A stretch of DNA of 60,256 bases, taken from the NCBI RefSeq assembly GCF_004010195.1, contig NC_057735.1, positions 11,154,420-11,214,675 of the forward strand, read 5' to 3'. Positions 6,241 to 58,611 of this stretch are shown one piece after another. A model generated the notes under the pieces. That model ran no database searches and was not told the origin of the DNA. It saw only the letters and a program-made list of their open reading frames with translations. The DNA is from Chiloscyllium plagiosum. Lineage: Eukaryota. Positions within the stretch are counted from its first letter, which is position 1, and each line of letters starts with the position of its first letter. The translations under genes were made by a program, and so were the position numbers.

Positions 6241-6249
6241 AAAATTATA

Positions 6250-7570: not shown

Positions 7571-7649
7571 AGTGAATGGGATAATGAAGGGAAAAGTGTT
7601 GGTGGTTTTTGGATTTTCAAATATAGTCAGTTTTCTAATAAATGGTTAT

Positions 7650-8507: not shown

Positions 8508-8635
8508 GTAGAACATTTTCATTGTTGATATTTCATTGATTCCAAGTGAGAATAAGTGACTTAACATAAATAATTTTCAATTTCAGACTATAATTTATCA
8601 GAATGGAAATGGTGGCTGAATTTATACAGTGCAAC

Positions 8636-10617: not shown

Positions 10618-10709
10618 CCTATTCTGCAGTGTAAACAGGGGATAAATGTTTGAAACATCAAACAGTCTTGTTTCCTTCAAATGATTTTGTATTTCTCCAT
10701 TTTGCACAG

Positions 10710-10800
10710 TTGCGTTGTCTGGGATGTTGTACGCTGGGTACTCTTCACTCTCCTGGTGATTTGTTCTGTTTCAGTCACAATGTTTACACGAAAACATTAG
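10710..10800 (+). pseudogene. Gene A transmembrane exon
   Basis: gcacag acceptor; CVVWDVVRWVLFTLLVICSVSVTMFTRKH* then gtgagc. Confidence 0.85.
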
Positions 10801-16742: not shown

Positions 16743-16779
16743 ATGTGGATTTTAATTGTCCTCATTTGTTCCATTCCTG
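16743..16779 (+). pseudogene. Gene B leader exon (MWILIVLICSIP)
   Basis: Homolog of the other leader exons, donor GTGAGT at 16780. Confidence 0.8.
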
Positions 16780-26142: not shown

Positions 26143-26834
26143 CATAGTTCCCCACAAAGAAGATTGAAAATATATCATTCAGAGCCATTACCATTTCGCA
26201 TCAAAAATTACTTTGAAAAACCTTATGTTTGCATTTTGTTTATGATAATAATGTAATGACATTAAAACATACAATGAGTTTAATGATAACCTTTTGTTTT
26301 AAATATAATTCCACTTGAATTACAGAAATTGTGTTTTTTGTATGTGTTTTGATAAACTATCCATTATAATAATGTTTATGCAGACACATGAATGATTTTT
26401 AAATTGCATGACCATAAAATTAAACTCCACAGAAATAACCATAATTTTTTGTCCAAACTTTTTGTCCCAATCCAAGTAATCAAAAAGTTTAGGGTCCATA
26501 TAGTTACAGGATTCAAATGCAATCAGGGATGAATGGGAAAGTGAAATTCAGAACACAGCCAGATCAGCCATGACCTTCTCAATGGGCTGAGGGTCTCACT
26601 TCTGCCTTATCGTTCCAGATTGTACTCCCCAACACAGAACATCGAACATTCCAGTCCAGTACAGGCCCTTCAACCCTCGATGTTGTGCCAACTGAATATC
26701 TAACATATATGGTCATATATTTGTTACAGATATAGTGCAGTTTCCCCTGTTAACAGGGGCACAACATATTGAGTTATATTTATTTGTATTAAGAATTTCA
26801 TTCTTGTTCAATTTCTGAAACATTATTTTCCCAG

Positions 26835-27153
26835 CTTCATCATATCTGTGGACAAACAAGAAAGTAACAGGAATTGTGGGAAGATCAATCACAATAAATT
26901 GTCAATACAACTCACTGTTCAAGCCCAACATGAAATACTGGTGTCATGGTTGGTCTATACATTGCTCATATTTGGTGAGAAAACTGATCCAGGTGGACAG
27001 CGAGGAAGAATATCAATCAAGGATTACAAGGCACAAGGAGTATTTGTTGTGACCATGGAGGATCTTCGCAGGGAAGATGCAGGATGGTACAGCTGGGTAT
27101 TGATAAACAAGATAGTGATAATTTACGTGCTGTAAAGCTTGAAGTATCTGATG
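26835..27153 (+). pseudogene. Gene B divergent V-set Ig exon with two frameshifts
   Basis: ASSYLWTNKKVTGIVGRSITINCQY..MKYWCHGWSIHC / RISIKDYKAQGVFVVTMEDLRREDAGWYS[C]GI; 319 nt, not a multiple of 3; no downstream exons found. Confidence 0.85.
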
Positions 27154-27274
27154 GTACATTTCTCATTGATTTCCTTGATTAATCTCTACTGAAATGTCTG
27201 ATCAATGTTTTATATGGGAGGAACCATGAACGCTCCAATATCCCAAGGTGCCCCAGCAATGTCGATACTTGTTG

Positions 27275-35400: not shown

Positions 35401-35541
35401 GGAGGCTAGTACAATTGCAACATTTAAAAGGCACCTGGATGGTTATATGAATAGTAAGGGTTTGGAGGGATATAGGCCAGGTTCTGGCAGGTAGGACTAG
35501 ATTGGGTTTGGATATCTGGTTGGCATGGACGAGTTGGACCG
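32436..35541 (+). mobile_element. CR1 LINE with nearly complete degenerate ORF2 (APE endonuclease and RT)
   Basis: YFNVRGL..ITETWL, YYRPP, GDLN, SDHNSI, then RT motifs; absent from paralog near 54700. Confidence 0.93.
33215..33528 (+). mobile_element. HE1-like SINE nested in CR1
   Basis: SINE head and AATCT tail interrupt CR1 ...gggaagcc / aatgagataac. Confidence 0.88.
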
Positions 35542-36508
35542 CGCTGTACTTCTCTGTACAGCGACCTTGAAATATGCCATTTCCTTTTGCTGTCTGGAGC
35601 CTCCTACGTTCTATGAGACTCCCAGAAAAGGTGATTTGATGCTGCATTTCCTCTTTAGATCAGACTCAGGTTTCTTTGTTTACATAATTTATTAATGTAT
35701 GCATGGGAGCTGTACACGTTGAATAAAAGTTGAATAAATCAATTCTTTCGAATAACAACAAATGTATTTTATTATTTTAACAGATAACAAGGCTCCATTC
35801 AATCAAACTATTACACACTAATTCACTTGTCTCTCTGCCCAACAGCATTTACATTGTCTTTGTCTTCATTCCAGATTAGGATACATGACTATATTATCCA
35901 ATGAGATTTAAAAGAGGGCATGGACAGAGTGAACAGCCAAGATCCTTTTCCTATCTGGGGGTGTCCAGATCTAGAGGGCATAGGTTGAAGGTGAGAGGGA
36001 AAAGATTTCAAAATGACCTGAGGAGTAACTTTTTCACATAGAGGGTGGGTGTGTGTATGAAATGAGCTGCCAGAGGAAGTGGTGGAGGCTGGTCCAATGA
36101 CAGCATTTAACAGCATGAGGTCATCATGGAGAGAGATGAGGCAGGACCAGAGTAGGCCATTCAGCCCCTCGAGGCTCCTTCAGCATTCACCTGGATCAGA
36201 GCAGATTTTCCATCTGAATACCATGTTTTCTTGCAATACCCCCCCCCCATGTCCCTCCATATCTTTATTACCCAGAACATTATTGATCACTGTTTTGCAT
36301 ATACTCAAGGCTGGAGCCTCCAGAGCTCTCTGGGGCAGAGAATTCCAACAAACCATCACCCTCTGAGTGAAGAAATTCCTGCTCATCTCAGTCAACCCAT
36401 TCTTCTCAAACTGTGTCACCTGCTTCAAAACCCCTCCACTCAGGGCCACCTCATTGATGGGGAACTTAGAGTGCTCAAAATCATTCGTGTAAAGGCCATG
36501 ATGCTCAC

Positions 36509-36599
36509 CTAATGTTTTCGTGTAAACATTGTGACTGAAACAGAACAAATCACCAGGAGAGTGAAGAGTACCCAGCGTATCACATCCCAGGCAACGCAA
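36509..36599 (-). CDS. Gene C exon 5, transmembrane exon ending in TAG
   Basis: Polypyrimidine tract plus acacag; SCVAWDVIRWVLFTLLVICSVSVTMFTRKH*; conserved in three copies. Confidence 0.85.
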
Positions 36600-39500
36600 C
36601 TGTGTAAAACAGAAGAAATACAAAATAATTTGAAGGAAACAAGACTGCTTGATGTTTCAAACAGTTATCCCATGTTTACACTGCAGTATATTGTAGCAAG
36701 GTAATGCAGCACAGCTCAGGGAGTTACGTAGGAAAATTAAATAACAGTTTAATTTATGAATGACTGAAACAATATATAAAAGCCAAATGTAACAAGTTTC
36801 AGTCCTGTCATGCTCAGCATTTTGTTGTCAATGAGGATTATTAGATGTGGATGGATAGTTACAGGAGCACTGCAGTCTGGTGCGATATTCCAGTGGATGA
36901 GATGTCTCTTCAGTGAGTGAGGAACTCAGGATATTATCATCCCACACTGTTCCTGCACCTGCTAACAGGCAAGGCTTAACCAGCTGGAACCAGACAGCCT
37001 CCCACCCTCTCAGTTTGGGAATAATGTTTAACATGAGAGAGAACGGAGGAGGAGAAGATGACAGAGAATGTCGTGTCCCTGGCAGTGATACTCCAGATGC
37101 CCTGGCTCAACAACATGTCACTTCTTTGACATATACAACACTGTGAGCTTAGATGAATAATGAAGCATTTAAATTGGGATGTGGCAGACAGAGAATTGGC
37201 ATTTCTTGTTATGAATGTCCAATAACTTAAATAACAACATTGTAAATGTTACGACCTGGAAATTGAACCCCTTTGCTAATTAAACCTAAAATTAAAACAC
37301 TCAGAAAATCTCGCCTTCAGCTCACCAATAAGGAAGCGCACATAATGACATTGCATGAAATCAGTGACCATTGACATTCTGATAAGTTATCACCTAAAAT
37401 TGAAACTTATTGCAAGCCTATGCTAAGTCACTTATTCTCACTGGAATCAATGCTAATGGAAACATTGACAATGAAATTTTTCTACCTTTTCCTGACAGAC
37501 TTGGGTCCTGCCGATGTTCCTGTTGCTGTTGGTGATATTGTTGGTGAAGTTGTTGGTGATATTGTTGTGAATGTTGTTGATGATTTTATTGAGGATTTGT
37601 CACAAGTATATTCCCTTCCTATTGAGACATAAGGTAATATTCAGCTTCATCTGAGTCTCAGTTACAGACAACCAAGAGAGCACTCTTCACCAATGGAACC
37701 TCAGGACTTGTTGTGAATAATGGATTTTGTTGAATTCATTTGTCTCTAACTCCCCCTGTCTGGAGAGATGTGGTAGTGACCTAGTTTGCATGTAATTTGT
37801 ATTTTGTTCCTCACCCGGACTTTGGCGCTACTGTATTTTTATTAAAGCATTTGAAAGCCTGAGGTTGGGTGGGACTATATTACTAAGATCACCTTTCTCA
37901 TCCTTGTCAAACATAAACGAAAGTTCCAGCCACTGAGCTGGTCACTGCTCCCGCTGGACAATGTATTTCTGGGGGATCCAGCAGCCCCTGCTCTGTCCTG
38001 TAATATTCTGTGATTGCTGGGTGAGCTTCCACTGTGACTTTTGCCTCCACTATTGTATTTAGACTCAATGATGTAATCTTTACGTTAGCTCCTGTTACAT
38101 GAGAACAAGGCGTGGATTTTGTAGTACTGAGAAATCAACAGATATTTATACCAGCATCTGGCGAAACATATCTCACAACCACAGACACTTCAGATCTGGG
38201 CTGAAACTGAGGTATTCAATTACAAACAGTAACACCCGTCCATCAGTATGTCATGCCTGATGTGACCCTGACTAAGATGGAGTCTGACACCATTATCCCC
38301 TCAGGTCACATGCTACGATACAGTGATGACTTTATCTATTAAAGGTATAACACACACAAGCTGTGAGATGTAACACAAAGCTGGAGTGAAGCACGCATGC
38401 ATTTTCTGAAGCTTTATTACAATCTTGTCCATTCTCATAAATAAGTTAACACCTTGTTCAAATTTGTTCAATATCATAGAGACATAATGTGATGAGGTAC
38501 AGTTATTTGTCAGTATGAAAGAAACTTAACCAATGAGCAGTTTGATTAAACATTGAATGAATGTGTCAGCCTCAGTGTTTGTATAAAACTTACCGATGCT
38601 GCTGATTTATATCATGGAACTACAGCCCCTCTCTGCTACACTGGGAACTCAGACATGAACCATTTCACTGGGTTTTGTTCCCTGAGTATTTGAGGCTGTG
38701 CAGTAATATTGATGATGTTGCCGTGTGAAGGATTGACAATGTCGAACCAGTTTATTGGTGTCAGAGATCTTTGAATCTTGAGATGGGGTCTTCTCAGACC
38801 ATGTGTAATGAATGGGGAGGGATCCCTGGACAAACTCACAGGAGACTGTCACTGAACCCCCAGAAATGAGACATTTGATTGGGATTAAAATTGAAGTCCA
38901 GAAACAGAGATGGCTTCATTGGGAAATAAACATTTGTTACAAAACTGACTATAATTGAAAAACCAACAACCCACAACACTTTGCCCTTCACTATCCCATT
39001 CAGTGTCATAGACACATATGGCACAGAAATAGACCCTTCAGTTTAATATGTCTGTGCTGAAAAAGTTTCTCAAATAAACCAGTCCCACTTGCTTGCATTT
39101 GGCACATTTCCCTCCAAATCTTTCTTATTTATGTACTGATCCAAATGTCTTTTTGATGTTGCAACTGCCCCTTCATCTCCCATGTCCTCTGGCATTTCAT
39201 TCCACATATAAAACACCCTCTGCGTGAAAATATTGTCCCTCAGATTCCTTTCAGATCTGTCTCCTCTCACCGAGAAAACATGACCCCTCACATTGTACTC
39301 TCTCAGCCTCGTGAAAGAAACCTTTGCTAAACACCTTATCTAGACCCCTCATGATTTTATAAACCTCGATAATGTCCCCTCCCAACCTCCTTTGCTCCAG
39401 GGGAAAAAGTCCCAGCCTATCCTTATCACTCAAACCCTCCAATCACAGCAACATCTTAGTAGATCTTTTCTGAAACCTCTTCAATTTAATCATAACCTTC

Positions 39501-42500
39501 CTGAAGCAGGGTGACTCGAACTGTACACACGAAACCAAAAGTGACCTCACCATCATTCTGTACAAGCTCAACATGATGTTCCAACTCCTACACTCAATGG
39601 TCTGAGCAATGATAGTAAGCACGCTAAATACCTTCTTAACCACCCTCTCTACCTGTGATGCAAATGTCAAAGATCCCCAGGGTCACTCTGTTTGACAGCA
39701 CTACCCCAGGCTGTACTTTTAATTGTGTAACTCCTGTCCTGTTTTGTTTTACCAAAAGGCTATACCCCACATTGAACAAAATAAACTCCATCTGCCAATC
39801 CTCAGCGCATTGACCCAATTGATCAAGATCCCTTTGTAATCATAGATAACTTTTTTCACTGTCAACGATACCACCAATTTTGGTGTAATTCATAAATTTA
39901 CGAACCATGCCATCTAAATTGTCATCCATATTGTTTATATAATTTACACCGATCCCTGCAGAACACCACTGGTCACAGGCCTCCAGTCCGAAAAAATGAC
40001 CCTCCACCACCCTCTGTCTCCTGCCATCAAGGTAATTTTGTATTCAATTAGCAAGCACACCCTGAATCCCATGTGATCTAACTTTACAAATTACTCCTGA
40101 ATGTGGAACCTTGTTACAAAAGTCCATGGAGACAACAATTACTGTTCCCCCTCATCAAGCTTTTTGCTTACATCCTGAAAAAAATGGAACCAAGTTTGTG
40201 ATGCACGACTTCCCACGCTCTGTCCCTAATTAGTTCTTGCCTCTCCAAATATATGTCAATCCAATCTTTAAAAACCCTCTGCAACAACAGTCCAAAGATG
40301 TGCAGGTTATGTGAATTGGACACGATAATGTACAGGTTAGGTGCGTTAGACAGGGGAAATGTTTCTGTGTAGGATGCTCGTCGGAGGGTTGGTGTGGAAT
40401 TGTTGGGCCGAATGGCCTGTTTCACACTGTACGGAATCTGTCATTCTATGATTCTCACTTACCCACCACTGATATCAGACTCACAGATATGTAATTCCCA
40501 GGCTTCTCCACACAGCTTTTCCTACATAAAGGGATAACGTTAGCCACCCTCACTTCCTCCAGCACTTCACCTGTGACTGTGGATGATACAAATAGCGGCG
40601 CTAAGGGGACCCACACTTTCTTCCCTAATTTCCACTTGATCAGGTCCTAGAAATCTATCTGTTGTTATATCTTTTAAGATTTTCAGGACTTCCTCTTTCT
40701 GTAATGTGGACTGTTTTCATGGCATCAATGTTCATTTACCTGAATTCCCTTGCCTCCATGTCTTTCTCCACAGTAAAATATTCAAAATATTTATTGAGTA
40801 TCTTTTCCATCTCCTGTGGTTCCCCACAATGACGATCCCGGTTACTTCCTTCCCTGAATCTGAGAGTTGGTGTGTTCCATTGGGGTTTATTAAAGGGTTT
40901 GGGCTGGTAACTACGACCCAGATATACCACTTGTTTAAAACCACGGGTTTCACATGGAGCTGTCGCTTGCTGATATTGGCAGTGGTCACTTCCATCCTCT
41001 TGAGATGGTTTTCTGATCTTGCAGGAATAATGGAAAACCTCATCTACAGACACATAAGCCACCGTAAGGAGCCATGAGGCAAACAGATGAGGTTCCCCAT
41101 CTCCAAGGAGTACTCAGAAAACACAGCTTGGGTGTGTTTTGCGTGAGTAATGTCTGCAACAATTATCCTGTTAGTTCTTTATCTTTTAGTCTTTAATGGC
41201 CAGCGTCTGTTGCCCATTCCTAATTGCCCCTGACTGAGTGGCTTTCTAAACCTTTTGAAGAGGGCAGTTAAGAACAAACCACATTGCTGGAGTCCCATGT
41301 AGAGCAGATGTGGAAAAGGCGGCAGATTTCCTTCCCTAAAGGACATTGATGAATCAGATGGGTTTTGGCACTTTAGAGAATCTGAGGAGATCCCAAAATA
41401 CTCTCCACCCTTCAGGCACTCTGCCTGTATTCCTGATGAAGGGCTTTTGCCCGAAACATCGATTTTACTGCTCCTCGGATGCTGCCTGAACAGCTGTGCT
41501 TTCCCAGCACCACGAATCCAGAATCTGGTTTCCAGCATCTGCAGTCATTGTTTTTACCTCGATATTTCATTTGTACAACTGCTCTCCACTCTTTCCCCAA
41601 TATCCGTCCGAAATCTGGTCACACTAGCTACGTATTGAACTTAGTAATTCCATATGTTAGAAAAATGCAAATTGTAAGACAATCAACCACTATTTTAACT
41701 TGTGAGGAGTTTTGGAGTTTTTGCAAAGTTTTTGCATGTTGTGGGCAGTATTTTATGTACCTGCTCATTTTCCAATTACCGTACAAACCATTGGCGTAGA
41801 TCAGAACTGACAATGAAAACATACATTTTATCATTTGCAATTTTCAAGTGTGGAGATAATAAGAAAGCATTGTTTACATCACACTTACCAATGTTCGGCA
41901 TTTTTATTCTATAACTGCAGTTCTTCTCTCTTACATTGTTGACTGACACATGAACAATTTCACTGGATTTTGTTCCCTGAGTATTTGAGGCTGTGCAGTA
42001 ATATTGATGATGTTGCTGTGAGAAGGATTGACAATGTAGATCCAGTTTATTGGTGTCAGAGATCATTGAATCTTGAGATGGGGTCTTCTCAGACCATGTG
42101 TAGTGAATGGGGAAGGATCCACAGGCAGATTCACAGGAGACTGTCACTGAACCCCCAGAACGTGAGACATTTGGTTGGGATAAATATTGAAATCCAGGAA
42201 CAGACACAGCTTCTGTGGGAAAGAAACAATTATTCTGTGAGAAAATTCAAATATTCCCCAACACTTTGTCACTTTTCTTCCTGGATAAAACACTGATCAG
42301 ACATATCAGCAGAGAGTAATTTAAAATAAAATGAGTCACGTACCATCAGAAATGTGCAGCTTTACATTAAACATTGGGTCATGGCCAGGAGTCTCGATCC
42401 CACAGCTGTACCATCCTGCATCTTCCCATTGAAGATTCTTGATTGTGACAAGAAACATTCCTCGTGTTTTGTCGTCAGTGATCGTTATTCTCCCATTTGG

Positions 42501-44716
42501 CCAATTTGTTTTTGCTCTAACAGAACACAGACGACTCCATCCTTGACACCAATATTTCACGTGTGACTGGTTATGCTGCGCTTCGTAATGACAAGATATT
42601 GTGATTGCTCTTCCCAAAATTCCCGTTACGTGTTCCTCTGCCCATAAAGCATCTGAAACTGAAGAGACAACATTTCAAAAATTTAACTGGAAAGAATTGC
42701 TTATTACAAACAGATACATTTTAATCAGCTACATTCCATCCAGTATATGATGAATGTAATCATTAATATAAACCCTTATCAGAGCCTCAGGTGTTCCAAA
42801 TTCCCAGGGAATGATTGAAACAGTCGGGATATTCTCTTACCCCACTGGTCAAGCTTTGGGACAATCTTGAAATTGGGTTTGTGCTGCCCGCAGTGGGCTC
42901 TAACTCCAACGTGTGTGACATCATCGAAATGTTTCCCCCCCCGGAGAGCAGCCTGAGTGACAGGCCTGGGTTGGAGTCGGCTGAGGATCAGTGTGAAGGA
43001 GGATACAGGTGCTGAAGGGTCCTTACTCCGACTGGAGAAGGAGGGTTTCATCCAGGGAGGAGGGGTGGGGGTGTGTGTGGTGTAGACTCATGGTGGGCTC
43101 AGGGGCTGCATTTTCAGGGCTCAAGGGGCAGATATAACAGGTGACCCAGGAAAATGATGAGAGTCCTCAAGTTGGAGAGGAAGAGAACTGAAGTTTAGCA
43201 GGGGCTGGTTCACGATGGGAGAGAGAGAGATCAATGTGCAGGATCTTGACGGCAGTAAAGGCAGGATTATTTGCAATCACACATTGTTGTCAGTGTAAGG
43301 AGAGTAAAATAATATATGTAATTTACTGATAATTCCAGAGAGATGGTACCTGAGAAAATGTTAAAATTGCTGCCACATTGTGTCCTGGGTGGGGAAGAGG
43401 TGCAGCCTGTTGATGACTGGGTAAATTTACTTCAATAATTACTGAGAGAAATGTCTTTATTAAGCGTAAGTGAAGAGGTGGAGTGGAGGGAAGAAAGGAA
43501 AAAGACACGTGAATGATTTAAGGTGGTGAAGGGCAGGAAACAGAGACCTCATGGGAAAAAAGGAAGCCTTGAAAAAAAGAGAATTGCGAAAACAGAGAGA
43601 TGAACACTTCAGGTTTCTGTCTGTGATGTTTTCTGCATGAAATTGGTGGGCAACAGCCAAAAAAAAGGTTTCAGAAAGTTTTCCTGGAACAGAATTCATG
43701 GAGTTGTAGCCGAGAGTACTGCAACGTTGAGAATTTTAACCATGAGTGTTTGAAAATGTCTTGATTATAAATGGAGAGATGACAATGATGGGCTGCAATT
43801 GTATTGCCGTGTTACATTGTAATGTGAGAATCAATGGGATTGAAAGAGAGTAAGCAACTTGATTCAAGTTAATGACTGAAAGATAAAAAGCTTTTTATGG
43901 GAAGGGAAATATAAACCAACCACCTACTTTTGTGACAGAGCCTCACAAGACATTTAATAATGAACAGCACTTCAAAAATAAAAAAAAGCAAGCTCAAGAT
44001 GTTTAGTTTGAGGGCATATTACCCTCCAGTTTCAGTGTGTTATTAATATTCTAAACTTTGAATAACTTAAAATTATTGTGCTGGTGTGTTCACTTAAAAG
44101 AAACATTATGTTGTCCTTTTTATTTCATTCATAATTAATAATGCCGCTCCAAAGTATTTGGGAACTCTGTCACATGAGATTATAATGTGTTCAGTAGAAC
44201 ATACAATATTTTGTGATGTATTTCATATATTTTTACATTTGTTCATTTAAACTTCAAAGACTTCCATACATAGGGACACATGGGGCAGGCAAAGCACATG
44301 CTGTGTCTGTTTTCTGCAGCCTGTCACTCTCCTGAAGCCAGTTGCTGTAATGTGAGGGGTGTCAAACTGCATTGGATATGGCTCACCTGGGATCTCACCC
44401 AGTCCTGCTCCCTGCCCTGGGCATGTTGGAAGGATTTGCAGGTTGATAATGAACCTGTTTGGCTTTGTGAGAATACACATTCCTTTGCAAAATGTGTTGG
44501 AGTGAGAATCGAACTGTGAGCATTTGTCACAGCAATAACAATGTTACCCACTGTGTCACACGATGTTCCTTTGGCCTTTTACATATCTCCAAATACTTAC
44601 ACATCTAGTCTGTATAAATTAGACCGTAGATTGTAATAGACATTGATTATCTGAATACACACCTCAGATGGTAACTCACCAGGAATGGAACAAATGAGGA
44701 GAATCAAAGTGCACAT
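36509..44716 (-). CDS. Gene C: intact 5-exon CD300/pIgR-like (MDIR-type) Ig-superfamily receptor, 299 aa (leader, V-Ig, C2/I-Ig, mucin-like stalk, TM with Arg, 4-aa tail)
   Basis: Exons 44716-44680 (37 nt), 42658-42344 (315), 42212-41889 (324), 37618-37486 (133) and 36599-36509 (91) have GT-AG borders, compatible phases (1,1,1,2) and total 900 nt with no internal stop. Protein: MCTLILLICSIPVSDALWAEEHVTGILGRAITISCHY...KYWCQGW...EDAGWYSCG...VTVSCES...YTW...YYCTASN...GREYTCDKSS..TISPTTSPTISPT..VRKSCVAWDVIRWVLFTLLVICSVSVTMFTRKH*. Confidence 0.85.
37486..37618 (-). CDS. Gene C exon 4, Ser/Thr/Pro-rich stalk with TISP repeats
   Basis: caatag acceptor; GREYTCDKSSIKSSTTFTTISPTTSPTISPTATGTSAGPKSVRK; donor AG/gtagaa; homologs at about 8422-8507 and 57464-57545. 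Confidence 0.75.
38594..38916 (-). pseudogene. Dead duplicate of the second Ig exon within an intron of gene C
   Basis: Homologous to exon 3 (VSCEFVQGSLPIHYTW..YYCTASN) but the acceptor is lost (cag to atg), with a 1-nt frameshift and three stops. Confidence 0.85.
39003..40830 (-). mobile_element. Older CR1 in gene C intron, with SINE fragment at about 40290-40455
   Basis: Degenerate RT ORFs; paralog of 6250-7570. Confidence 0.85.
41405..41560 (+). mobile_element. Penelope-like terminus with hammerhead motif
   Basis: CTGATGAAGGGCTTTTGCCCGAAACATCG at 41433-41461. Confidence 0.65.
41889..42212 (-). CDS. Gene C exon 3, C2/I-type Ig domain (FcR-like/PECAM-like)
   Basis: GGSVTVSCES..GSFPIHYTW...YYCTASN; cacag acceptor and gtaagt donor; ORF 41776..42207. 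Confidence 0.9.
42344..42658 (-). CDS. Gene C exon 2, V-set Ig domain of CD300/pIgR type
   Basis: ITISCHY, KYWC..W...C (extra C-C' cysteine pair), RITITDD, LQWEDAGWYSCG; ttcag acceptor and gtacgt donor; overlaps ORF 42336..42617. Confidence 0.92.
44680..44716 (-). CDS. Gene C exon 1, signal peptide (MCTLILLICSIP)
   Basis: ATG, hydrophobic leader, phase-1 donor GTGAGT; near-identical to three other leader exons in the window. Confidence 0.85.
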
Positions 44717-47314
44717 CGTTTTATTGTCAAAGATCAGTTCAGTTCTTGATGTCAGTCTCTCAGCGGTTGTTTCTCACATTGAAGTACGTGTGTAATGCAA
44801 TGTCTACAAGAAGTTAAATAAGGAGGAGGGTATAGGAAGCCACCTTCTGACACCACAGTCAGCCAGATGACGAAATTTAACCCTGATGAAACTTATCTAC
44901 TACCAGTCATGTTTAACAGAAGAATGAAATTACTTTTAATTTTAAGAATAGAAAAATCTGAAATCAAGACAGTTAAAGAGTCTGAATGTTAAGGATGATG
45001 TTAAGGATAATCTTGACTCAAGCTCAGTATTAATATTGAAATCTCAAATGATAACAACTGGCTTATTCACCTCTGTCAGAAAATTTTAATGAACATTTTT
45101 TGACAAGGGTTTCTTCAACAAAAATTAATCCTACAACTAAAAATAGATTTAACAAAGACTATTTGGAGTCTTAGGCAGAACATGTCTCCAGTTCACACTG
45201 AATAATTATTGTGTCAGGATCTGAGCTCCTGGATGTGCAGAAGAAGGACACCCTCTGCTCCAGTTCCACAAGATCCAAGTAAACAAGACATGGGGTCGAT
45301 TTCAGGCAGAAAAAGGAACTCAACAACAGAGAGACAATTCAGGGAGAAGTGAGCTGTGATTGAGTAACTGGGAGTGAGCTTCAATTCCAAGGTGAGGATC
45401 CCTCTGGTGAACCGACTGACATGGGGCTTTGTATTCACCAGGACATGGTTGATGATGAGTGAGTCTGGTGAACCAAGCTGGGTTTCACCTTTGAGAAGAT
45501 CAAAGGGGCTGACACCCTTCACCAACCGTGCTCATCCCCAGCCACAATGCTGAAGGCAGTGCCCCACCTTAACCCGTAATATGGAAGGAGAGTCACTGGA
45601 GTCATTACCCAGAGACTGAACCAACGAGGACAATCGCAATACTCTGTCTGGGAAACAGAAACAACACGTTGGGTAAACTCCTGGAGAACACTTGGAAACA
45701 TTTGGTGGTTAATATCCCAATGGGGATGAAACCCCTCTACTGTCAGGTCACCAGTGTCTGAGGGTCAGAAACAGAGAGCAGAGATCCCCCAGCCCCTGGA
45801 TGACATGGACACTGTAGAATCAGTTGGGAAAATAGGACCAGATTGAAAAATTAGATTCTGTGATGTAACAGTGAAGACAGCAGTTATTAACAAAGTGAAG
45901 AATATCTGATCTAATTGTCAGGGATCCTGTAAAGTGACTTGCTCAGTGTCAAAGCCATATCCTGGTAGACGGTCACTCAGCAGTTTTTAAAAGACCGTTC
46001 TTCTGAGACAAACAATTGCAGGACCTGGAGCTGCCACAAAGCCCCTCCCCCATTCGGATGGATGTCCCATTTGCTCTGGAATGGTGCAGTGATCCACCCA
46101 CAACACGGACATGAGCCTGTCCCAGGAGGTTTCCTTCCAGAGATTGTGATCAAAGGGCTGGGTCTGAAAACTCTCAGTACAGTCTTGAATGACCCAAAGT
46201 GTGCCACCCACAATATCCTGTTGATTAACACTGATGTGGGCTCTAAGAAAACTGCCCCCTCCCTGCCTTTCCAGAAAGCCTCTCCACTGAACATTTCCGT
46301 CAGTGGCTGCGCAAACGTGGCTGCAGACATATTGCTACAGGTGACACAGTTCTCCCTGTTTACTGATCTGTAGGCAATGGGTGCCAGGAGGGTGTTACAG
46401 TGTCTGCAGGTATGGGTTGTGGTTTCACAATGGGCTTTCCCCACAGGCTCTGGGGTTTTACCAGTGACAGAGGAGGCCAATCCCAAGTGTCTAGCAAGCT
46501 TTTCGAAAGCCTTTGGAAGAGCTGTGTAATGTCCCTGCTATAACAGTTAGTGAAATATTCCTGTGGTCTCCTGAGCTATTTGTCACACAGTTCCTGGACA
46601 ATATAAAATGTTCAGTACTGTAGGAACTTTATCTCTAGTTTACAGCACAGTTTAATTAATAACTCTTCTTCTGGTCCTTTGGAATCTCCCCTGTAGATTA
46701 ATCGATAAAGCTTCTCTCCCCTTTCACCTGTCCTCTTTGTGATTCATAACCTACATCCCGCTCAGGCCGGACCCCGATACATCTGTCCACTGTTTGTTCC
46801 ACCCACGTCCAACAATGTCCTTCAAATGGACCAGGATCCACAACATTAGCCTCCAGCAAGTGCTGTACCAGGGCAGCTCTCTCTCCAATTTGCAGACAAA
46901 AGCAACTAACACTTACTCTCTTTGTGCATCCATGGGTATCTAACACACATCCTCCTTGATAATATTCACACTTTTTTCTTATAGTGTCAAAAGACCATGA
47001 ACATCAAAACATGCAACAACTGTGGAAGCTTGTTTTTTACATCTCAACTTCTCAAAAATGGACAGCACAGTGGCTCAGTGGTTAGCACTGCTGCCTCACA
47101 GCCCCAGTTATCTGGCTTCAATTCATGCCTTGGGTGACTGTCTGTGTGCAGTTTGCCTGTTCTGCCTCGGATTCCAGCAATGTACAGGTATTGTGGAATG
47201 GTCATGCTAATTGTCCGGAGTGTCCAGGGATGTACAGGCACAGTGGATTAGCCATGGGAAATTTGTGGCTATCGGAACAGAATGGGGTCTGGGTCTGGTG
47301 GGATGTTCTTCAGA

Positions 47315-49786: not shown

Positions 49787-49823
49787 CGGGAATGGAACAA
49801 ATGAGGAGAATCAAAGTCCACAT
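49787..49823 (-). other. Orphan duplicated leader exon (MWTLILLICSIP), possible alternative first exon of gene C
   Basis: Intact ATG and GTGAGT donor; followed by about 1.1 kb of intron-1 homology that stops near 48700, with no V exon of its own. Confidence 0.75.
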
Positions 49824-52800: not shown

Positions 52801-55670
52801 GAATAGTTCAGTGTGGAGCTAACAACATCGTGGATGAGAGCTCTGCTGGACAGGGAGATGGAGGAGTCAGTGGCTAAGGAAAGGTGATTGTGCTGGGATA
52901 AAGACAATGGCTTCAATCTTCAGAATTGTCAGGTGTAATTTTATTGAAGTCGTGAAAATGCCCAGACAAGCACAAACACAGCAGGTCGGTATGTCAGAGA
53001 CAGTCCTTAAACTGGATCAATGGCGATGGAGGCATCAACCATCACTATCAATCCTGAGCCGTACATCTAGCTGTCTCCTTGGAGAGGTGAACAACTGTCA
53101 TTCAGACTCAGGCTCAGTACTCACTGTCTGCTGGATATGACCCATTGGCAAGAAGATTCAGGATGTGGGGGGGCTGCTGTTGGACTGGGGTGGACAAAGC
53201 TGAAAATCACACGACACCAGATTATACACCAACAGGTTTATTTGAAAATACAAGCTTTCAGAGCACTACTCCTTTGTCAGGTAGCCAGTGGGACAGGATA
53301 CATAGGACACAGCATCTATAAGTAAAAGATCAAAGTGTCACACGATGGATGCAATATATTAGAGAACCCTAGATTGCTGTTAAGTCTGTAATCACGTAGA
53401 ATGGGGATGCAGGTTTCGATTGATTAATATGTAAATCCCAGAATTTCTCTCAAGTCACCACCCCAATATATCTTAAGGCTTTATCAGTAAAATAAAAAAG
53501 TGACATCTCAGCTCAGACCTTGTATTAAAGGTATGAGGTTAGAGTCTCATCTCTAGTCAGACTGGTTTTATTTTGAAAGTAAGAATTGATAAAATATCAC
53601 ATTAACTCACTGCCTATAGATTGTGTGCTTTTTGAACGGAATAGAAAGTATCTACAAATACAGATTTGCAAATGCAGTTCACCCCATAGACTTATATATG
53701 TGTGTGTGTGTAGCAGGGGAGGTTGGGGGAGAGATGGACAGGGATGATGTTTGTGAGGGAGAGAGAGAGTGTCTGAAAATTCAGGGGAAATGTTGTCCAT
53801 ATCATATCTCCATTAGGATGCCTCAAGTGTGTATCCTCATTCAAATGTCATCGACACCACCAAGCACTGTGCACATTGCAGACTATCTCCTCACAGTGTG
53901 TGAACCTGGCAGCTGAGAATTGCTGTCTTCCACTGTTTGCCATGCTGTGAATTACAGAAATACCAAACCCAAGTGGCACTTTAAAATTAGCTTGTCAGAT
54001 TATATTCACGTCGTTAATGAGACACCGAGGGTGAACAATGTTGTAGTCAATGATTGCTTGAGGCCATCACCTGTAATGTTTATTTCTGGACAATGAGTGA
54101 CCTGTTGTTGAAGTGTAATTTGATGCCAGTGATAGGACTGAATCAGTGAATGCATGGTGGATGCAATTGCCCCGAATAGGTTTCAAATTCATAGAGCTTT
54201 GCACTAGCCCTCTCCCCCTTATCATCCTAAAATATGTATAACTGACTCCACTCCCACTCTGCAATTGGGTGTCAGTCATTTTACACAGTTATTGTGCAGC
54301 AACTGGGTCAGGATGGATGAAGTGTCAACTGAGTGCTTTTGTGACAAAAACACAAATTGCTGGAGAAACACAGCAGATCTGGGGACACCTGTGGAGAGAA
54401 AGCAGAGTCACTGATTCACGTCTGTTGACCATTCTTCGGAAGTGTTAGTAGGTTCGATAAGGTGCTCCACATGCTACAGACATGGGGAGTAGGGTGTTTC
54501 TGTGAATTAACACCAGACTCTACCTGTGATGCAGAATGATCCTTCTTCCTCTCTTTAATGTTGTTGTCCCTGTGGATCCAATGATCTTTTGTCACCTCAC
54601 CATTTCTGTTCATTCTCTCTCTATAGCCAAATGTCCCTAATTTCCCACAAGAGCTCATGTCTTTGAGAATTACAAAGCCCTTATTGGTCCTAACCCTCCC
54701 CATGTGAAGGACAAAATGGCACTGACCTGGGAAAATATCATTTCCTTTTGTTCTCTGGTGCCTCCTATGTTCTATGAGAGCCCCAGAAAGAGGGATTTGA
54801 TGCTGTATTTCTAATTTAGATCAGACAAGATTCAGGTTACTTTGTTTATATGTTTATTAATATCTGCATGGGAGCTGTACACATCAACAAATGCTGAACA
54901 GGTCAATTCATTTGAACAGCAACAAATGTATTTTATTATTTTAACAGATAACAAGGTTTTGTCCAGTCAAACTAATACACACTAACTCACTGATATCTCT
55001 ACCCAAAGATAATTACATTGTCTTCATTCCAGATTAGGACACATGACTATATTATCCAATAAGGTTTAAACGAGAGCATGGACAAGGTGAACAGCCAAGG
55101 TCTTTTTCATCTCTGGGAGTGTCCAGAACTAGAGGGCATAGGTTGAAGGTGAGAGAGAAAAGATTTCAAAATGACCTGAGGAGTAACTTTTTCACACAGA
55201 TGGTGGGTGCGTGTATGAAATGAGGTGCCAGAGGAAGTGATGGAGGCTGGTACAATGACAGCATTTAACAGCATGACGTCATCATGGAGAGAGATGACGT
55301 AAGACCAGAGTAGGCCATTCAGCTCCCTCGAGGCTCCTTCAGCATTCACCTGAATCAGAGCAGATCTTCCACCTGAATACCATTTTTCTTGCACTAATTC
55401 CATATCCCTCCCTATCTTTCTTACCCAGAACATTATTGATCTTGTTTTGAATATACTCAAGGCTGGAGCCTCCAGAGCTCTCTGGGGCAGAGAATTCCAA
55501 CAAACCATCACCCTCTGAGTGAAGAAATTCCTGCTCATCTCAGTCACAAATGGTCAACCCATTCTTCTCAAACTGTGTCACCTGCTTCGAAACCCCTCCA
55601 CCCAGGGCCACCTCATTGATGGGGAACTTAGAGTGCTCAAAATCATTCGTGTAAAGGCCATGATGCTCAC

Positions 55671-55761
55671 CTCATGTTTTCGTGTAAACATTGTGACTGA
55701 AACAGAACAAATCACCAGGAGAGTGAAGAGTACCCAGCGTATCACATCCCAGGCAACGTAA
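55671..55761 (-). CDS. Gene D transmembrane exon, no stop (ends KHE at a phase-0 donor)
   Basis: acacag acceptor; SYVAWDVIRWVLFTLLVICSVSVTMFTRKHE/gtgagc; functionality of gene D unknown. Confidence 0.7.
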
Positions 55762-55837
55762 CTGTGTAAAACAGAAAAAATACAAAATAATTTGAAGTAA
55801 ACAAGACTGCTTCATATTTCAAGTACATATTCCCTTG

Positions 55838-56126
55838 TTAGATTAGATTCTGTACAGTATGGAAACAGGCCCTTCAGTGCAACAAGTCTGCACTGACCCT
55901 CTGAAGTGTAACCTACCTGGACTCACTCCCCTACATTTACCCCGGCTCTGGGCAATTTATGATGGCCAATTCACCTAACCTGCATATCATTGGATTGTGG
56001 ATGGAAACTAGAGCAGACACGGGGAGAATGTGCAAACTCCACACAGACAGTCACCTGAGGTGGGAATCAAACCCGGGTCCCTAGCGCTGTGAGGCAGCAG
56101 TGCTAACCACTGAGCCACCATGCCAC
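55838..56126 (-). mobile_element. HE1-like SINE in gene D intron
   Basis: Reverse complement of GGCATGGTGGCTCAGTGGTTAGCACTGC; absent from paralogs. Confidence 0.85.
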
Positions 56127-56729
56127 CCCTGTTAACCTGTGACACTGCAGTATATTGTAGCAAATTAAAGCAGCAAAGCTAAAGGAATTATGTGGGAAAA
56201 TTAAATTACAGTTTTTTTATTACTAACATGAACAACAGATAAAGTTCAAATGAAAGAATCCTCTGTAGTACGTCCTGTAATGGTATTTATATCTGATGAA
56301 GCAGTCTTTATGTTAGCTCCTGTCAGGTGCAGACAAGGCGTGGCTATTGTAGTCCTGACAAATCAACATATGGACAGAACAGTTTCTGGTCTAAATGTAC
56401 CTTCCAGCCACAGAAATGAACAACAGATAAAGGTCAAATGAAACAAGTTGCAGTAACATGTCCTGGAATGGTCAGCCCAATGTTATACATGAGGATTATA
56501 AGGTTAAATGGGTGGACCTGGTGCAAGTGGCCCTGCAGTCTGGTGTAATATTCCAGTGGGTGAGGTGTCTCTTCAGTGAGTGAGGAACTCAGAATAACAT
56601 CATCCTATACTGTTCCTGCACCTGCTAACAGGCCAGTATTATCCAGCTGAAACCAGACAGCCTTCCACCCTCTCAGTTTGGGAACAATGTATAACACGAG
56701 AGAATGGAGGAGGAGAAGATGACATGCAG

Positions 56730-57105
56730 CATCAATGTGGATTTCATCAGTTTGCTCATTTCCCCTCCCCCCACCTTATCCCAGATACAACCCCTTCAAC
56801 TCAGCATCACCCTCATGACCTGTCCTACCAGTCCATCTTCCTTCCCACTTATCCACTCCTCCCTATTCTCTCTCCTATCACTGTGATCCCCAACTCTATC
56901 TACCTATCACACTCTCAGCTACCTTCTCCCCAGCCCCACCTCCCTCTCATCTATTTCTCAGTCACCTGGCCCACATTCCTGATAAAGGACTCTTGCCCGA
57001 AATGTCAACTCTCCTGCTCCTCGGATGCTGCTTGACCTGCTGTGCTTTTCCAGCACCACACCCTCGACTCTGATCTCCAGCATCTGCAGTCCTCACTTTC
57101 TACTC
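56730..57105 (+). mobile_element. Penelope-like 3' fragment
   Basis: C/T-rich tract, degenerate cctgataaaggactcttgcccgaaatgtc, ..ctccagcatctgcagtcctcactttc. Confidence 0.6.
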
Positions 57106-57463
57106 AAGAATGTAATGTCACTGTCAGTGATTCTCCAGAACACTCTGGTTTAAAAAGCTATCGTTGTTGGTCTTTAAAAAATACCGTGAGCCGAGATAAA
57201 TAATGGAGCAGTGAATTTTAATGCTGAAAACAGCATCTCAATCTGGAACGTTCCAAACAGAAAGTTGGTACTTCCTGTTATGAATTTCCAATTACATAAA
57301 TAGCGACATTGTAAGGAAGGTAACAGAATAGCACTGTATAAAATCAGCCATCATTTCGATTTTGTTAAATTGTCATTTGAAATTGAAAATTATTGTACAC
57401 TTTATGTTAAATCAGCGACTCTCACTTGGAATCAATGAAATTTTGACCATGAAATTGTTCTAT

Positions 57464-57545
57464 CTTTTCCTGACAGACTTGGATTCTGAAGATGATCTTG
57501 TTGTTGGTGACATTGTTGAAGAGACTGCACAAGTATATTCACTTC
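57464..57545 (-). pseudogene. Gene D short stalk exon with mutated donor (GT to AT)
   Basis: caatag acceptor; GSEYTCAVSSTMSPTTRSSSESKSVRK; donor reads atagaa versus gtagaa in paralogs. Confidence 0.65.
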
Positions 57546-57963
57546 CTATTGAGACCTCAGAAAATATTTAGCTTCATCTGGGTCTCACTTCCAGACAACC
57601 AAGAGAGCTCTCCTCACCAATGGAACCTCACGGCTTGTTGTGAACAATAGATTTTGTTGAATTCATTTCTCTCTAACTCCCCCTGTCTGGAGCGATGTGG
57701 TAGCAACCTAGCTTGAACATAATTTGTGTTTGGATCCTCGCCTGGACATTGATGCTCCTGTATCCTTATTAAAGCATTTGAAAGGCTGAGGTTGGTGGGA
57801 CTATATTCCTGAGATCCCCTTTCTCATCCTTGTCAAATGTAAAGGAATGTTCCAGACACTGAGCTGGTCACTGTCCCCTGCTGGACAATATATTCCTGGG
57901 GGATCCAGCAGCCCATGTTCTGTTCTGTAATATCCTTGATGTGGAGGTGCTGGTATTGGACTG

Positions 57964-58111: not shown

Positions 58112-58611
58112 NNNNNNNNNNNNNNNNNNNNNNNNNNNNNNNNNNNNNNNNNNNNNNNNNNNNNNNNNNNNNNNNNNNNNNNNNNNNNNNNNNNNNNNNN
58201 NNNNNNNNNNNNNNNNNNNNNNNNNNNNNNNNNNNNNNNNNNNNNNNNNNNNNNNNNNNNNNNNNNNNNNNNNNNNNNNNNNNNNNNNNNNNNNNNNNNN
58301 NNNNNNNNNNNNNNNNNNNNNNNNNNNNNNNNNNNNNNNNNNNNNNNNNNNNNNNNNNNNNNNNNNNNNNNNNNNNNNNNNNNNNNNNNNNNNNNNNNNN
58401 NNNNNNNNNNNNNNNNNNNNNNNNNNNNNNNNNNNNNNNNNNNNNNNNNNNNNNNNNNNNNNNNNNNNNNNNNNNNNNNNNNNNNNNNNNNNNNNNNNNN
58501 NNNNNNNNNNNNNNNNNNNNNNNNNNNNNNNNNNNNNNNNNNNNNNNNNNNNNNNNNNNNNNNNNNNNNNNNNNNNNNNNNNNNNNNNNNNNNNNNNNNN
58601 NNNNNNNNNNN

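What the first reader, a model, noticed from the sequence alone, without database searches (positions are those of the whole stretch)
36509..44716. Hidden intact V+C2 Ig receptor gene: CD300/pIgR-type V domain joined to an FcR-like C2 domain, mucin stalk and charged TM
Seen: five exons splice in frame to 299 aa, and the ORF track shows only two pieces. Knowledge: KYWC plus a second C-C' Cys pair and DxGxYxC mark CD300/pIgR/TREM/FcmuR-type V domains, and mixed-domain receptors of this kind (MDIRs) are known from skate. Inference: a member of a little-characterised chondrichthyan leukocyte receptor family, possibly binding Ig or lipid ligands.
Basis: partly seen in the sequence, partly recalled or inferred. 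Interest (0 to 1): 0.85.

Follow-up and report, generated by a model that had tools for sequence, protein, structure and literature searches.

The report
Annotated shark CD300-like activating receptor gene
This is a real, intact five-exon immune-receptor gene of a bamboo shark, but it is already in the public annotation and belongs to a receptor family first described in skates, so it is ordinary rather than hidden or new.

Summary
On the minus strand, five GT-AG exons (44716-44680, 42658-42344, 42212-41889, 37618-37486, 36599-36509) add up to 900 nt, which is 299 codons plus a stop.

Each exon's translation is an exact substring, in order, of RefSeq XP_043572422.1, "CMRF35-like molecule 8 isoform X1", Chiloscyllium plagiosum. 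The gene is therefore already annotated, though uncharacterised.

- **Family:** it belongs to the skate MDIR family. It is 52% identical over 245 aa to MDIR2 and 48% over 288 aa to MDIR5, including the transmembrane (TM) helix.
- **V domain:** CD300/pIgR type. It superposes on CD300lf at 1.3 Å with 34% identity.
- **Second domain:** an ordinary C2-set Ig domain. "FcR-like" is only weakly supported.
- **Membrane end:** a disordered Ser/Thr/Pro stalk, a TM helix with a family-invariant Arg, and a 4-residue tail. These point to an adaptor-coupled activating receptor.
- **Paired partner:** an ITIM-bearing protein of the same species is 80% identical in the ectodomain.

RNA evidence for this exact gene is thin. 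The ligand is unknown.

Two first-reader notes of this scan on this same window cover the TM exon; none covers other DNA.

The parts
44680..44716 (-). Exon 1: start codon and 12 leader codons plus 1 base (phase 1). Donor GTGAGT.
   Evidence: Exact match to P0197 residues 1-12.
49787..49823 (-). Alternative first exon. Its leader differs at residue 2 (W for C). Donor GTGAGT. It matches the leader of RefSeq isoform X2.
   Evidence: tblastn 49823-49788; sequence and donor; P0225 leader. Use of this exon by the gene is inferred from the isoform; no reads were seen.
42344..42658 (-). Exon 2: end of the signal peptide plus a CD300/pIgR-type V-set Ig domain with two disulfide pairs (C35-C98 and C50-C57).
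   Evidence: - Pfam V-set, E 1.3e-12.
- PDB sequence hits to pIgR, CD300A and CD300LF.
- Foldseek: CD300lf at rmsd 1.3 Å, 34% identity.
- Exact match to P0197 residues 14-117.
41889..42212 (-). Exon 3: C2-set Ig domain (C144-C190) plus an 18-residue Cys-containing linker. Donor GTAAGT, phase 1.
   Evidence: -.
- pLDDT 85-98 in all but one 10-residue block of the domain in the full model.
- C178 is Cys in 40 of 40 family rows and C216 in 39 of 40.
38580..38917 (-). Decayed duplicate of the C2 exon (pseudo-exon). Not part of the product.
- Acceptor is TG instead of AG.
- In-frame TAA, shared with the equivalent copy in the neighbouring paralogue.
- 1-nt deletion.
- A TGA near the 3' end.
- The donor GTAAGT is kept.
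   Evidence: alignment A4.
37486..37618 (-). Exon 4: membrane-proximal Cys (C231) and a Ser/Thr/Pro-rich stalk. Donor GTAGAA, phase 2.
   Evidence: -.
- pLDDT below 50 over residues 234-270.
- No Pfam family.
- RefSeq isoform X3 skips this exon and ends after a frameshift.
36509..36599 (-). Exon 5: TM helix with D275 and R278, a 4-residue tail and a TAG stop, followed directly by GTGAGC.
   Evidence: -.
- Arg is present in 12 of the 12 family rows with this TM type; Asp in 4 of those 12.
- A contig of run X1 is identical over 36489-36599. It starts at the first exon base, with 44 further letters that do not lie on the intron (record 1).

Best explanation
This is an intact, conventionally spliced vertebrate gene, most likely of Chiloscyllium plagiosum. 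It encodes a 299-residue type I membrane receptor of the MDIR family.

**Architecture**
- Signal peptide.
- One CD300/pIgR-type V domain, which carries the variable, presumably ligand-binding loops.
- One C2-set Ig domain, tied to a short Cys-containing linker.
- A disordered stalk that is probably O-glycosylated.
- A TM helix with a conserved Arg near its outer end.
- A 4-residue tail.

**Proposed mechanism (inferred)**
- With no signalling tail of its own, the receptor pairs through the TM Arg with an acidic TM residue of an ITAM adaptor. It then acts as the activating partner of a paired-receptor set.
- A same-species paralogue has an 80% identical ectodomain, an uncharged TM and several ITIM-like tyrosine motifs. 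It would be the inhibitory partner.

**Shown versus inferred**
- Shown: gene structure, identity to the RefSeq model, family membership, domain types, conservation of the Arg, and existence of the inhibitory look-alike.
- Inferred: adaptor coupling, cell type and ligand. My best guess for the ligand is a lipid or another non-Ig ligand, by analogy with CD300.
For: - **Exons:** they are exact, ordered substrings of XP_043572422.1, and all introns are GT-AG and in phase.
- **Skate family members:** 52% identity over 245 aa to MDIR2 and 48% over 288 aa to MDIR5, including the TM segment.
- **V domain by sequence:** as single-domain hits, CD300A scores 56.4 bits and CD300LF 53.6 bits, against pIgR D1 at 40.7-43.4, NKp44 39.7, TREM2 35.5 and FCMR 26.7.
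- **V domain by fold:** CD300lf at rmsd 1.3 Å over 109 columns, TM-score 0.87 on the target.
- **Model quality:** mean pLDDT 81.7, with a helix at 271-298 and a disordered 234-270.
- **TM type:** 12 of the 40 aligned family rows, from sharks, rays and skates, carry a TM segment of the W-x-V-x-R-W type. Arg is present in 12 of those 12.
- **Inhibitory partner:** same-species protein P0202 (XP_043572421.1) is 80% identical over 241 aa. It falls in the same 100/97-supported clade.
- **Variable V loops:** among 8 close relatives, 50 of 104 V columns vary against 23 of 91 C2 columns. Variation is concentrated in three loop regions.
- **RNA:** a contig of run X1 is identical to the TM exon and begins exactly at its acceptor.
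Against: - **No junction seen in reads.** No read or contig shows any junction of this exact gene.
  - The one spliced V-to-C2 contig in X1 has 12 other letters in 265.
  - Its junction codon reads Ala, as in the inhibitory paralogue P0202, not Asp.
- **No exon coverage in RNA-seq.** Two single-cell poly(A) RNA runs of the same species label gave no reads on any exon. One was sampled at about 2 in 100 reads and the other at about 6 in 100; the latter laid no reads at all.
- **Decaying neighbours.** At least two neighbouring copies in the window look disabled. One has a stop in the V exon. Another has AT in place of the GT donor of the stalk exon.
- **No known adaptor partner.** No adaptor was examined here. 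A 2014 survey reported finding no FcεRIγ, PIGR or FcRL homologues in shark genomes (passages of PMC4016189).
- **Asp not conserved.** The Asp next to the Arg is present in only 4 of 12 rows, so it is unlikely to be essential.
- **Unusual Cys residues.** P0197 carries Cys at 148 and 271, where other family members do not.
Confidence: 0.72

Rival explanations
1. The reading frame is intact, but the copy is silent or on its way to becoming a pseudogene. It sits in a birth-and-death cluster, and the RefSeq model would rest on similarity and on reads from paralogues.
For: - Neighbouring copies are broken: a stop in the V exon at 2955-3263, a fragmented V at 26828-27155, and an AT donor on the stalk exon at about 57466.
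- The scRNA runs X16 and X17 laid reads only on repeats, or none at all.
- The only spliced V-to-C2 contig fits a paralogue.
Against: - All five exons, four splice-site pairs, the start and the stop are intact.
- All six Cys that are Cys in at least 37 of 40 family rows and lie in the two Ig domains are kept.
- A contig identical to this copy's TM exon, stop included, starts at the acceptor in a run that holds spliced RNA. The two other TM exons in the window differ from it at 2 and 3 positions.
- RefSeq lists three isoforms, including one that skips an exon. That usually reflects transcript evidence (my inference; the evidence itself was not seen).
Confidence: 0.12
2. It is a shark receptor for immunoglobulin (IgM, IgW or IgNAR). 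It would use a pIgR/FCMR-type V domain together with an FCRL/CD22-like C2 domain.
For: - pIgR gives the best whole-chain PDB score for the V exon. FCMR is also a hit, at E 5.1e-05.
- FCRL5 is the best solved sequence match for the C2 exon, at E 5.8e-17 summed over domains. FCRL4 is also a hit, at E 0.0049.
- Automatic names of multi-C2 relatives include "Fc receptor-like protein 5" and [quoted passage not shown].
Against: - As single domains, the CD300 proteins beat pIgR D1 and FCMR in score. They also beat pIgR D1 in fold match: CD300lf 1.3 Å and CD300a 1.9 Å, against 2.5 Å for pIgR D1.
- The pIgR total is inflated because five domains are summed.
- In the alignment, the basic residues of the pIgR D1 B-C loop are not matched here. 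That these residues bind polymeric Ig is recalled, not tested.
- Foldseek found no PDB match at E <= 0.001 for the C2 domain folded alone. VIA-align ranks it with generic C2-set domains.
- The V loops vary strongly between close paralogues. That fits diverse ligands better than a constant Fc.
Confidence: 0.08
3. The main product is a secreted V-C2 protein, a decoy or opsonin, made by skipping the stalk exon. The membrane form would be minor.
For: RefSeq isoform X3 (231 aa) joins exon 3 to exon 5 out of frame. It ends after six residues and has no TM (frame checked).
Against: - Two of the three RefSeq protein isoforms are full-length.
- The TM exon is 93.5-96.8% conserved between paralogues, against 73.8% for the V exon. 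That argues for selection on the membrane form.
- No read evidence was seen for either form.
Confidence: 0.05

Closest known systems
Clearnose-skate MDIRs: MDIR2 (ABC86796.1) and MDIR5 (ABC86800.1). Also elephant-shark MDIR2 (AFK11143.1).
   Same: - Same leader, V and C2 domains and Cys-containing linker. Identity to MDIR2 is 52% over 245 aa.
- The same Arg-bearing TM type as the C-terminus of MDIR5, at 48% identity over 288 aa.
- The family is multigene and has both charged-TM and ITIM-tailed forms.
   Different: - MDIR2 itself is the inhibitory form, with an uncharged TM and a long tail.
- MDIR5 has V-C2-V-C2.
- This protein has V-C2 with a 4-residue tail and a longer Ser/Thr/Pro stalk.
- The 2006 paper that defined the family was not held, so its own criteria are recalled.
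Mammalian CD300 (CMRF35-like) receptors, such as CD300lf and CD300a.
   Same: - A V domain with the extra C-C' disulfide.
- 34-36% identity and rmsd 1.3-1.9 Å.
- A stalk, plus charged-TM and ITIM-tailed family members. This architecture of the CD300 family is recalled.
   Different: - CD300 proteins have a single Ig domain (recalled). Here a C2-set domain follows the V domain.
Polymeric Ig receptor (pIgR).
   Same: The V domain is of the same subtype. Each of the five pIgR domains aligns with it, at 12-40 bits. Teleost pIgR is the top Foldseek row for the two-domain model.
   Different: - pIgR has only V-type domains.
- The teleost pIgR ectodomain superposes on the two-domain model at only 8.7 Å rmsd.
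- pIgR has a long sorting tail (recalled). Here the architecture is V plus C2 with a 4-residue tail.
C2-set domains of FCRL5, CD22 and CEACAM.
   Same: - Best solved sequence match for the second domain is FCRL5, at 64.7 bits summed. CD22 d6-d7 and FCRL4 follow.
- VIA-align: CEACAM6 Z 9.1, CEACAM5 Z 8.8, CD22 d1-3 Z 8.1.
- Beyond cartilaginous fish, the HMMER hits I looked up are bony-fish multi-domain proteins named CD22-like, sialoadhesin-like or hemicentin-like, at 24-37% identity.
   Different: - The best single FCRL5 domain scores only 20.4 bits.
- Foldseek found no PDB match at E <= 0.001 for the domain alone.
- The resemblance is that of a generic C2-set domain and does not show FcR family membership.
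Teleost DICP receptors.
   Same: A multigene family of Ig receptors. [quoted passage not shown]
   Different: No DICP sequence was compared here, so any relationship is untested.

Membership tests
MDIR (modular domain immune-type receptors of cartilaginous fish) | Significant full-ectodomain similarity to the named skate MDIR proteins. | tested here: met
   52% over 245 aa, E 7e-88, to MDIR2. 48% over 288 aa, E 3e-81, to MDIR5.
MDIR (modular domain immune-type receptors of cartilaginous fish) | N-terminal V domain of the CD300/TREM/pIgR type (as stated in passages of PMC3031540). | tested here: met
MDIR (modular domain immune-type receptors of cartilaginous fish) | Multigene family with activating (charged TM) and inhibitory (ITIM) members. 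| tested here: met
   - The window holds at least four copies or fragments.
- 12 of 40 aligned relatives have the Arg-type TM.
- Others have uncharged TMs with tyrosine-motif tails.
MDIR (modular domain immune-type receptors of cartilaginous fish) | Expression in leukocytes or immune tissues. | tested here: inconclusive
   One search gave one contig identical to the TM exon in a run that holds spliced RNA, and nothing on the exons in two scRNA runs. The tissue of the runs is unknown to me.
CD300 / CMRF35-like family (the RefSeq name) | V domain with two disulfides and the CD300 fold. | tested here: met
   - CD300lf: rmsd 1.3 Å, 34% identity. CD300a: 1.9 Å, 36% identity.
- C50 is Cys in 38 of 40 rows and C57 in 37 of 40.
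CD300 / CMRF35-like family (the RefSeq name) | A single Ig domain in the ectodomain (recalled). | tested here: not met
   A second, C2-set domain occupies residues 118-208.
CD300 / CMRF35-like family (the RefSeq name) | Orthology to a mammalian CD300 gene, shown by phylogeny or synteny. | not testable with these tools
Polymeric Ig receptor | An ectodomain built only of V-type domains, and a long cytoplasmic sorting tail (recalled). | tested here: not met
   The protein has one V domain, one C2 domain and a 4-residue tail.
Fc receptor-like (FCRL) | The second domain is specifically related to FCRL Ig domains. | tested here: inconclusive
   - FCRL5 is the top PDB sequence hit, but its best single domain scores 20.4 bits (i-E 0.0045).
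- FCRL5 is not among the top 50 VIA rows.
- Foldseek found nothing at E <= 0.001.
Adaptor-coupled activating immunoreceptors (functional class) | A basic residue inside the TM helix, and no signalling motif in the tail. | tested here: met
   R278 lies inside the predicted helix 271-298, and the tail has 4 residues. Arg is conserved in 12 of 12 rows with this TM type.
Adaptor-coupled activating immunoreceptors (functional class) | Physical association with an ITAM adaptor. | not testable with these tools
   This needs co-expression and co-precipitation.

The most novel reading that the evidence does not exclude
The MDIR V-C2 receptors would be the cartilaginous-fish representatives of the stock that later gave the pIgR/FCMR/CD300 V-domain receptors and the FCRL/CD22-type C2 receptors. 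This activating member would bind shark immunoglobulin. It would then be a molecular candidate for a shark Fc receptor, against the 2014 report that sharks lack PIGR, FcRL and FcRγ homologues.
Probability: 0.08. Interest if true: 0.65.

Novelty: already known. Interest (0 to 1): 0.2.

Why it matters
**Practical value**
- The RefSeq name "CMRF35-like molecule 8" hides the gene's real affiliation. It is an MDIR-family V-C2 receptor of the activating type, with an inhibitory twin.

**Value for comparative immunology**
- The locus is a clean example of a paired activating/inhibitory Ig-receptor cluster in a shark. It shows birth-and-death decay around an intact copy.
- Sharks do carry pIgR/CD300-type V domains joined to FCRL/CD22-like C2 domains. 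This qualifies the 2014 statement that no such homologues exist in sharks (passages seen).

None of this would surprise a specialist. The family has been in print since 2006.

Tried and rejected
1. **Apparent phase clash between exon 3 and exon 4.**
   - I first took AAT|GTAAGA as the exon 3 donor. That would be phase 0, against a phase 1 acceptor.
   - I then back-translated the ORF in my head and wrongly noted that the family donor was GA in this gene (note).
- Alignment A1 and a direct read showed G|GTAAGT at 41889/41888. The "broken donor" idea is rejected.
2. **Exon 2 acceptor.** I first used the downstream AG (exon start 42652, giving 297 aa). The stored protein shows that the upstream AG is used (42658, giving 299 aa).
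3. **Second C2 copy as a sixth exon.** Rejected, because the acceptor is lost and the copy has two stops and a frameshift.
4. **Word-based protein search with the V exon alone.** It found no candidate, because of the tool's length window.
5. **C2 domain folded alone.**
   - The model was mediocre, at pLDDT 72.5.
   - Foldseek found no hit at E <= 0.001.
6. **Pfam Ig_C17orf99.** It matches 28 of 40 family members, best E 1.6e-06. For this protein the score is 19.8-23.3 bits, below the cut-off of 26. I treat it as cross-matching between Ig profiles, not as a relationship.
7. **Tree labels.**
   - My regular expressions for activating or inhibitory type mislabelled at least P0189 and P0208. I therefore do not use the counts of label changes, only the supported local clades.
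   - P0024 was dropped from that tree because its ectodomain was short, leaving 39 of 40 rows.
8. **Literature.**
   - Searches found no paper on this gene or on MDIRs in bamboo sharks.
   - They found no paper on shark DAP12 or FcRγ either.
   - The MDIR paper and three reviews were not held.
   - No supplements were opened.
9. **Subsets used.**
   - Alignments A2 and A3 use 40 and 44 sequences out of about 240 proteins fetched.
   - One search uses 8 close relatives.
   - One search uses 7 family proteins.
   - name 10 each of the 150 listed hits.

Full report
**What is there**

The six-frame listing of 35500-46000 shows two long minus-strand ORFs with Ig-domain hallmarks, at 42336..42617 and 41776..42207. 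Stop-to-stop translation adds three more minus-strand pieces: a leader, a Ser/Thr/Pro-rich piece and a hydrophobic piece.

Reading the flanks gives five exons with canonical splice signals:

| Exon | Coordinates | Signals |
|---|---|---|
| E1 | 44716-44680 | ATG start; donor GTGAGT |
| E2 | 42658-42344 | acceptor CAG; donor GTACGT |
| E3 | 42212-41889 | acceptor CAG; donor GTAAGT |
| E4 | 37618-37486 | acceptor TAG; donor GTAGAA |
| E5 | 36599-36509 | acceptor CAG; TAG stop |

The lengths add up to 900 nt, which is 299 codons plus the stop.

I made no joined model.

**Two errors of mine on the way**

- I first chose the downstream AG for exon 2, which gives 297 aa.
- After back-translating an ORF in my head, I noted that the exon 3 donor was GA.

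**It is already annotated**

- An HMMER search of 1.84 billion representatives with the C2 exon gave 400 proteins at E <= 0.001, of which 104 were at <= 1e-10 and 20 at <= 1e-30. The top hits are shark and ray proteins at 60-90% identity.
- A word-based search with one full-length relative (P0025, catshark) returned 76 proteins at E <= 1e-10 among 1866 candidates.
- One of these, P0197, is 299 aa long. Every exon translation of the window is an exact substring of it, in order, and the four junction residues fit.
- P0197 is XP_043572422.1, "CMRF35-like molecule 8 isoform X1 [Chiloscyllium plagiosum]", on a 53.3-Mb record. The window is therefore most likely from that species.
- Isoform X2 has the same length and a leader that differs at residue 2.
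- Isoform X3 (231 aa) skips the stalk exon. It runs out of frame into the TM exon for six residues and would be secreted.

**Which family**

- The product is 52% identical over 245 aa (E 7e-88) to clearnose-skate "modular domain immune-type receptor 2", ABC86796.1. The match covers the leader, the V domain, the C2 domain and the Cys-containing linker.
- It is 48% identical over 288 aa to the C-terminal V-C2-TM half of MDIR5, ABC86800.1. That match includes the TM segment.
- An elephant-shark protein named MDIR2 sits in the cluster of hit P0094.
- I could not read the 2006 paper that defined the family. [quoted passage not shown]
- The automatic names of relatives vary widely: pIgR-like, CMRF35-like, Fc receptor-like 5, CXADR-like and A33-like. 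This shows that the family is annotated but not curated.

**The domains**

*V exon*
- Pfam V-set, E 1.3e-12.
- In the PDB the top score goes to pIgR, but that is a sum over five domains.
- As single domains the order in bits is: CD300A 56.4, CD300LF 53.6, pIgR D1 40.7-43.4, NKp44 39.7, TREM2 35.5, TLT-1 34.4, TIM-4 28.5, FCMR 26.7.

*AlphaFold model*
- I built an AlphaFold model of the stored protein from a 40-row family alignment. Its mean pLDDT is 81.7.
- The V domain scores 90-97 over blocks 21-120. The C2 domain scores 85-98, except for one block at 59.
- Residues 234-270 are disordered, and residues 271-298 form a helix.
- Foldseek puts the V domain on CD300lf at 1.3 Å (34% identity), on CD300a at 1.9 Å and on pIgR D1 at 2.5 Å.

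*C2 exon*
- It matches generic Ig profiles. Ig_3 gives 27.8 bits for the exon alone and 33 bits in the whole protein, against a cut-off of 30.
- Its best solved sequence relative is FCRL5, at 64.7 bits summed with a best single domain of 20.4 bits. SYG-2, CD22 d6-d7 and FCRL4 follow.
- Folded alone, it gave a pLDDT of 72.5 and no Foldseek hit at E <= 0.001.
- VIA-align ranked C2-set domains of CEACAM6 (Z 9.1), CEACAM5 and CD146, an amphioxus V-C2 protein and CD22.
- "C2-set" is therefore firm, and "FcR-like" is not.

*Conserved cysteines*
- The conserved Cys residues are C35/C98, C50/C57 and C144/C190.
- C178 is Cys in 40 of 40 rows and C216 in 39 of 40. These two may tie the linker to the C2 domain; this is my inference, and I did not measure distances.
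- C231 is Cys in 29 of 40 rows.

**The membrane end and the mechanism**

- In the 40-row alignment, 12 rows from sharks, rays and skates share the Arg-containing TM type. Arg is present in all 12, and the neighbouring Asp in only 4.
- Most other rows that reach the membrane have an uncharged TM and long tails with several tyrosine motifs.
- The same species has such a protein, XP_043572421.1 (P0202, 414 aa). Its ectodomain is 80% identical to this one over 241 aa.
- In an ectodomain tree of 39 rows, the two sit together with two Hemiscyllium activating forms in a clade supported 100/97. Skate MDIR2 (inhibitory) likewise sits with an Arg-TM skate protein, at 100/98.
- Among 8 close relatives the V domain varies at 50 of 104 columns, against 23 of 91 in C2. 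The variation clusters in three loop regions.
- I therefore read the gene as the activating half of a paired-receptor set. It would signal through an ITAM adaptor bound by the TM Arg. Assigning outer-leaflet Arg receptors to FcRγ-type adaptors is recalled knowledge. The adaptor itself was not examined.

**Expression**

- The run search listed no holder on record as RNA.
- I laid four runs on 36400-42399.

*Run X1 (kind guessed)*
- It holds a contig joined from 42213 to 42347, which is the V-to-C2 splice. So the run contains spliced RNA.
- That contig and its neighbour differ from the window (2 of 74 and 12 of 265 letters). The junction codon reads Ala, as in P0202. It therefore belongs to the paralogue.
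- A second X1 contig is identical over 36489-36599. It begins exactly at the first base of exon 5, with 44 more letters that do not fit the intron, and it runs 20 nt past the stop.
- This fits a spliced transcript of this copy. The other two TM exons in the window differ from it at 2 and 3 positions.
- No joint for exons 3-4 or 4-5 is among the 15 listed; 33 more were not shown.

*Other runs*
- The two single-cell RNA runs gave reads on repeats only, or none at all.
- The DNA-like run X12 covers all 30 bins.

**Surroundings**

The window is a cluster of this family:
- **Plus-strand copy at 715-10797.** It has an in-frame stop in the V exon and a frame problem in the stalk exon.
- **Further fragments.** A leader lies at 16743, and a fragmented V of another subtype at 26828-27155.
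- **3' part of a minus-strand copy.** Its stalk exon lies around 57546-57466, with AT in place of the donor GT. Its TM exon is at 55766-55674 and ends in GAG instead of TAG.
- **Decayed second C2 exon.** Both this gene and the plus-strand copy carry one, with a shared TAA. That duplication therefore predates the gene duplication.

No exon for an ITIM tail was found in the window with the two long-tailed proteins among the seven run, P0204 and P0032. Intron 3 holds LINE reverse-transcriptase fragments and a very high-copy repeat.

**Novelty**

The exact protein is in RefSeq, and the family has been described since 2006. My searches found no paper on this gene or on MDIRs in bamboo sharks.

A 2014 survey stated that no PIGR, FcRγ or FcRL homologues were found in shark genomes (passages). 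This family shows that the domain types do exist in sharks, but it does not show Ig binding.

I rate the finding as already known and of low interest.

Noticed in passing
window 715-10797 (+): A paralogous copy with the same exon order: leader 715-750, V 2955-3263, C2 3393-3665, decayed C2 copy 7669-7926, stalk 8413-8505, TM 10705-10797. It has an in-frame stop in the V exon and a one-base length difference at the start of the stalk exon, so it is probably a pseudogene.
   Followed up: partly
window 55674-57546 (-): The 3' part of another copy. Its stalk exon has AT where the other copies have the GT donor. Its TM exon ends in GAG|GTGAGC instead of TAG|GTGAGC, so it could splice on to further tail exons.
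   Followed up: partly
window 16743-16778 (+) and 26828-27155 (+): A further leader exon, and a V exon broken over three frames. The V is closer to another subtype of the family (P0189/P0203-like). Two N gaps lie between them.
   Followed up: no
window 38580-38917 (-) and 7645-7992 (+): Decayed duplicates of the C2 exon in two paralogues share a TAA stop and a diverged 3' end. The ancestor therefore had a V-C2-C2 layout, as some living relatives with two C2 matches still do.
   Followed up: partly
window 39000-41100 and 41400-41560: Intron 3 contains LINE-type reverse-transcriptase fragments. It also holds a short repeat with extreme depth in the DNA-like run (mean word depth about 1.5 million) that is also read in the scRNA run.
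   Followed up: no
window 36180-36500 (-) and 55107-55547 (-): Directly 3' of the TM exon in two copies lies the same LINE-tail-like ORF. In the Hemiscyllium model XP_060700983.1 this stretch is read as protein between two fused receptor genes. That 650-aa model therefore looks like an annotation artefact.
   Followed up: no
window 58946-60229 (-), next to the N gap 58112-58611: A long tandem repeat with strong GC skew (0.545 in the last 2 kb). It gives a 427-aa repetitive ORF and is probably not coding.
   Followed up: no
family alignment A2 (P-ids): Pfam Ig_C17orf99 (the IL-40 Ig domain) matches the C2 domain of 28 of 40 family members at E <= 0.001, mostly below its cut-off. This is probably profile cross-talk. 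It might still be worth one profile-profile test, given that the CD300 genes and C17orf99 share a human chromosome arm (recalled).
   Followed up: partly
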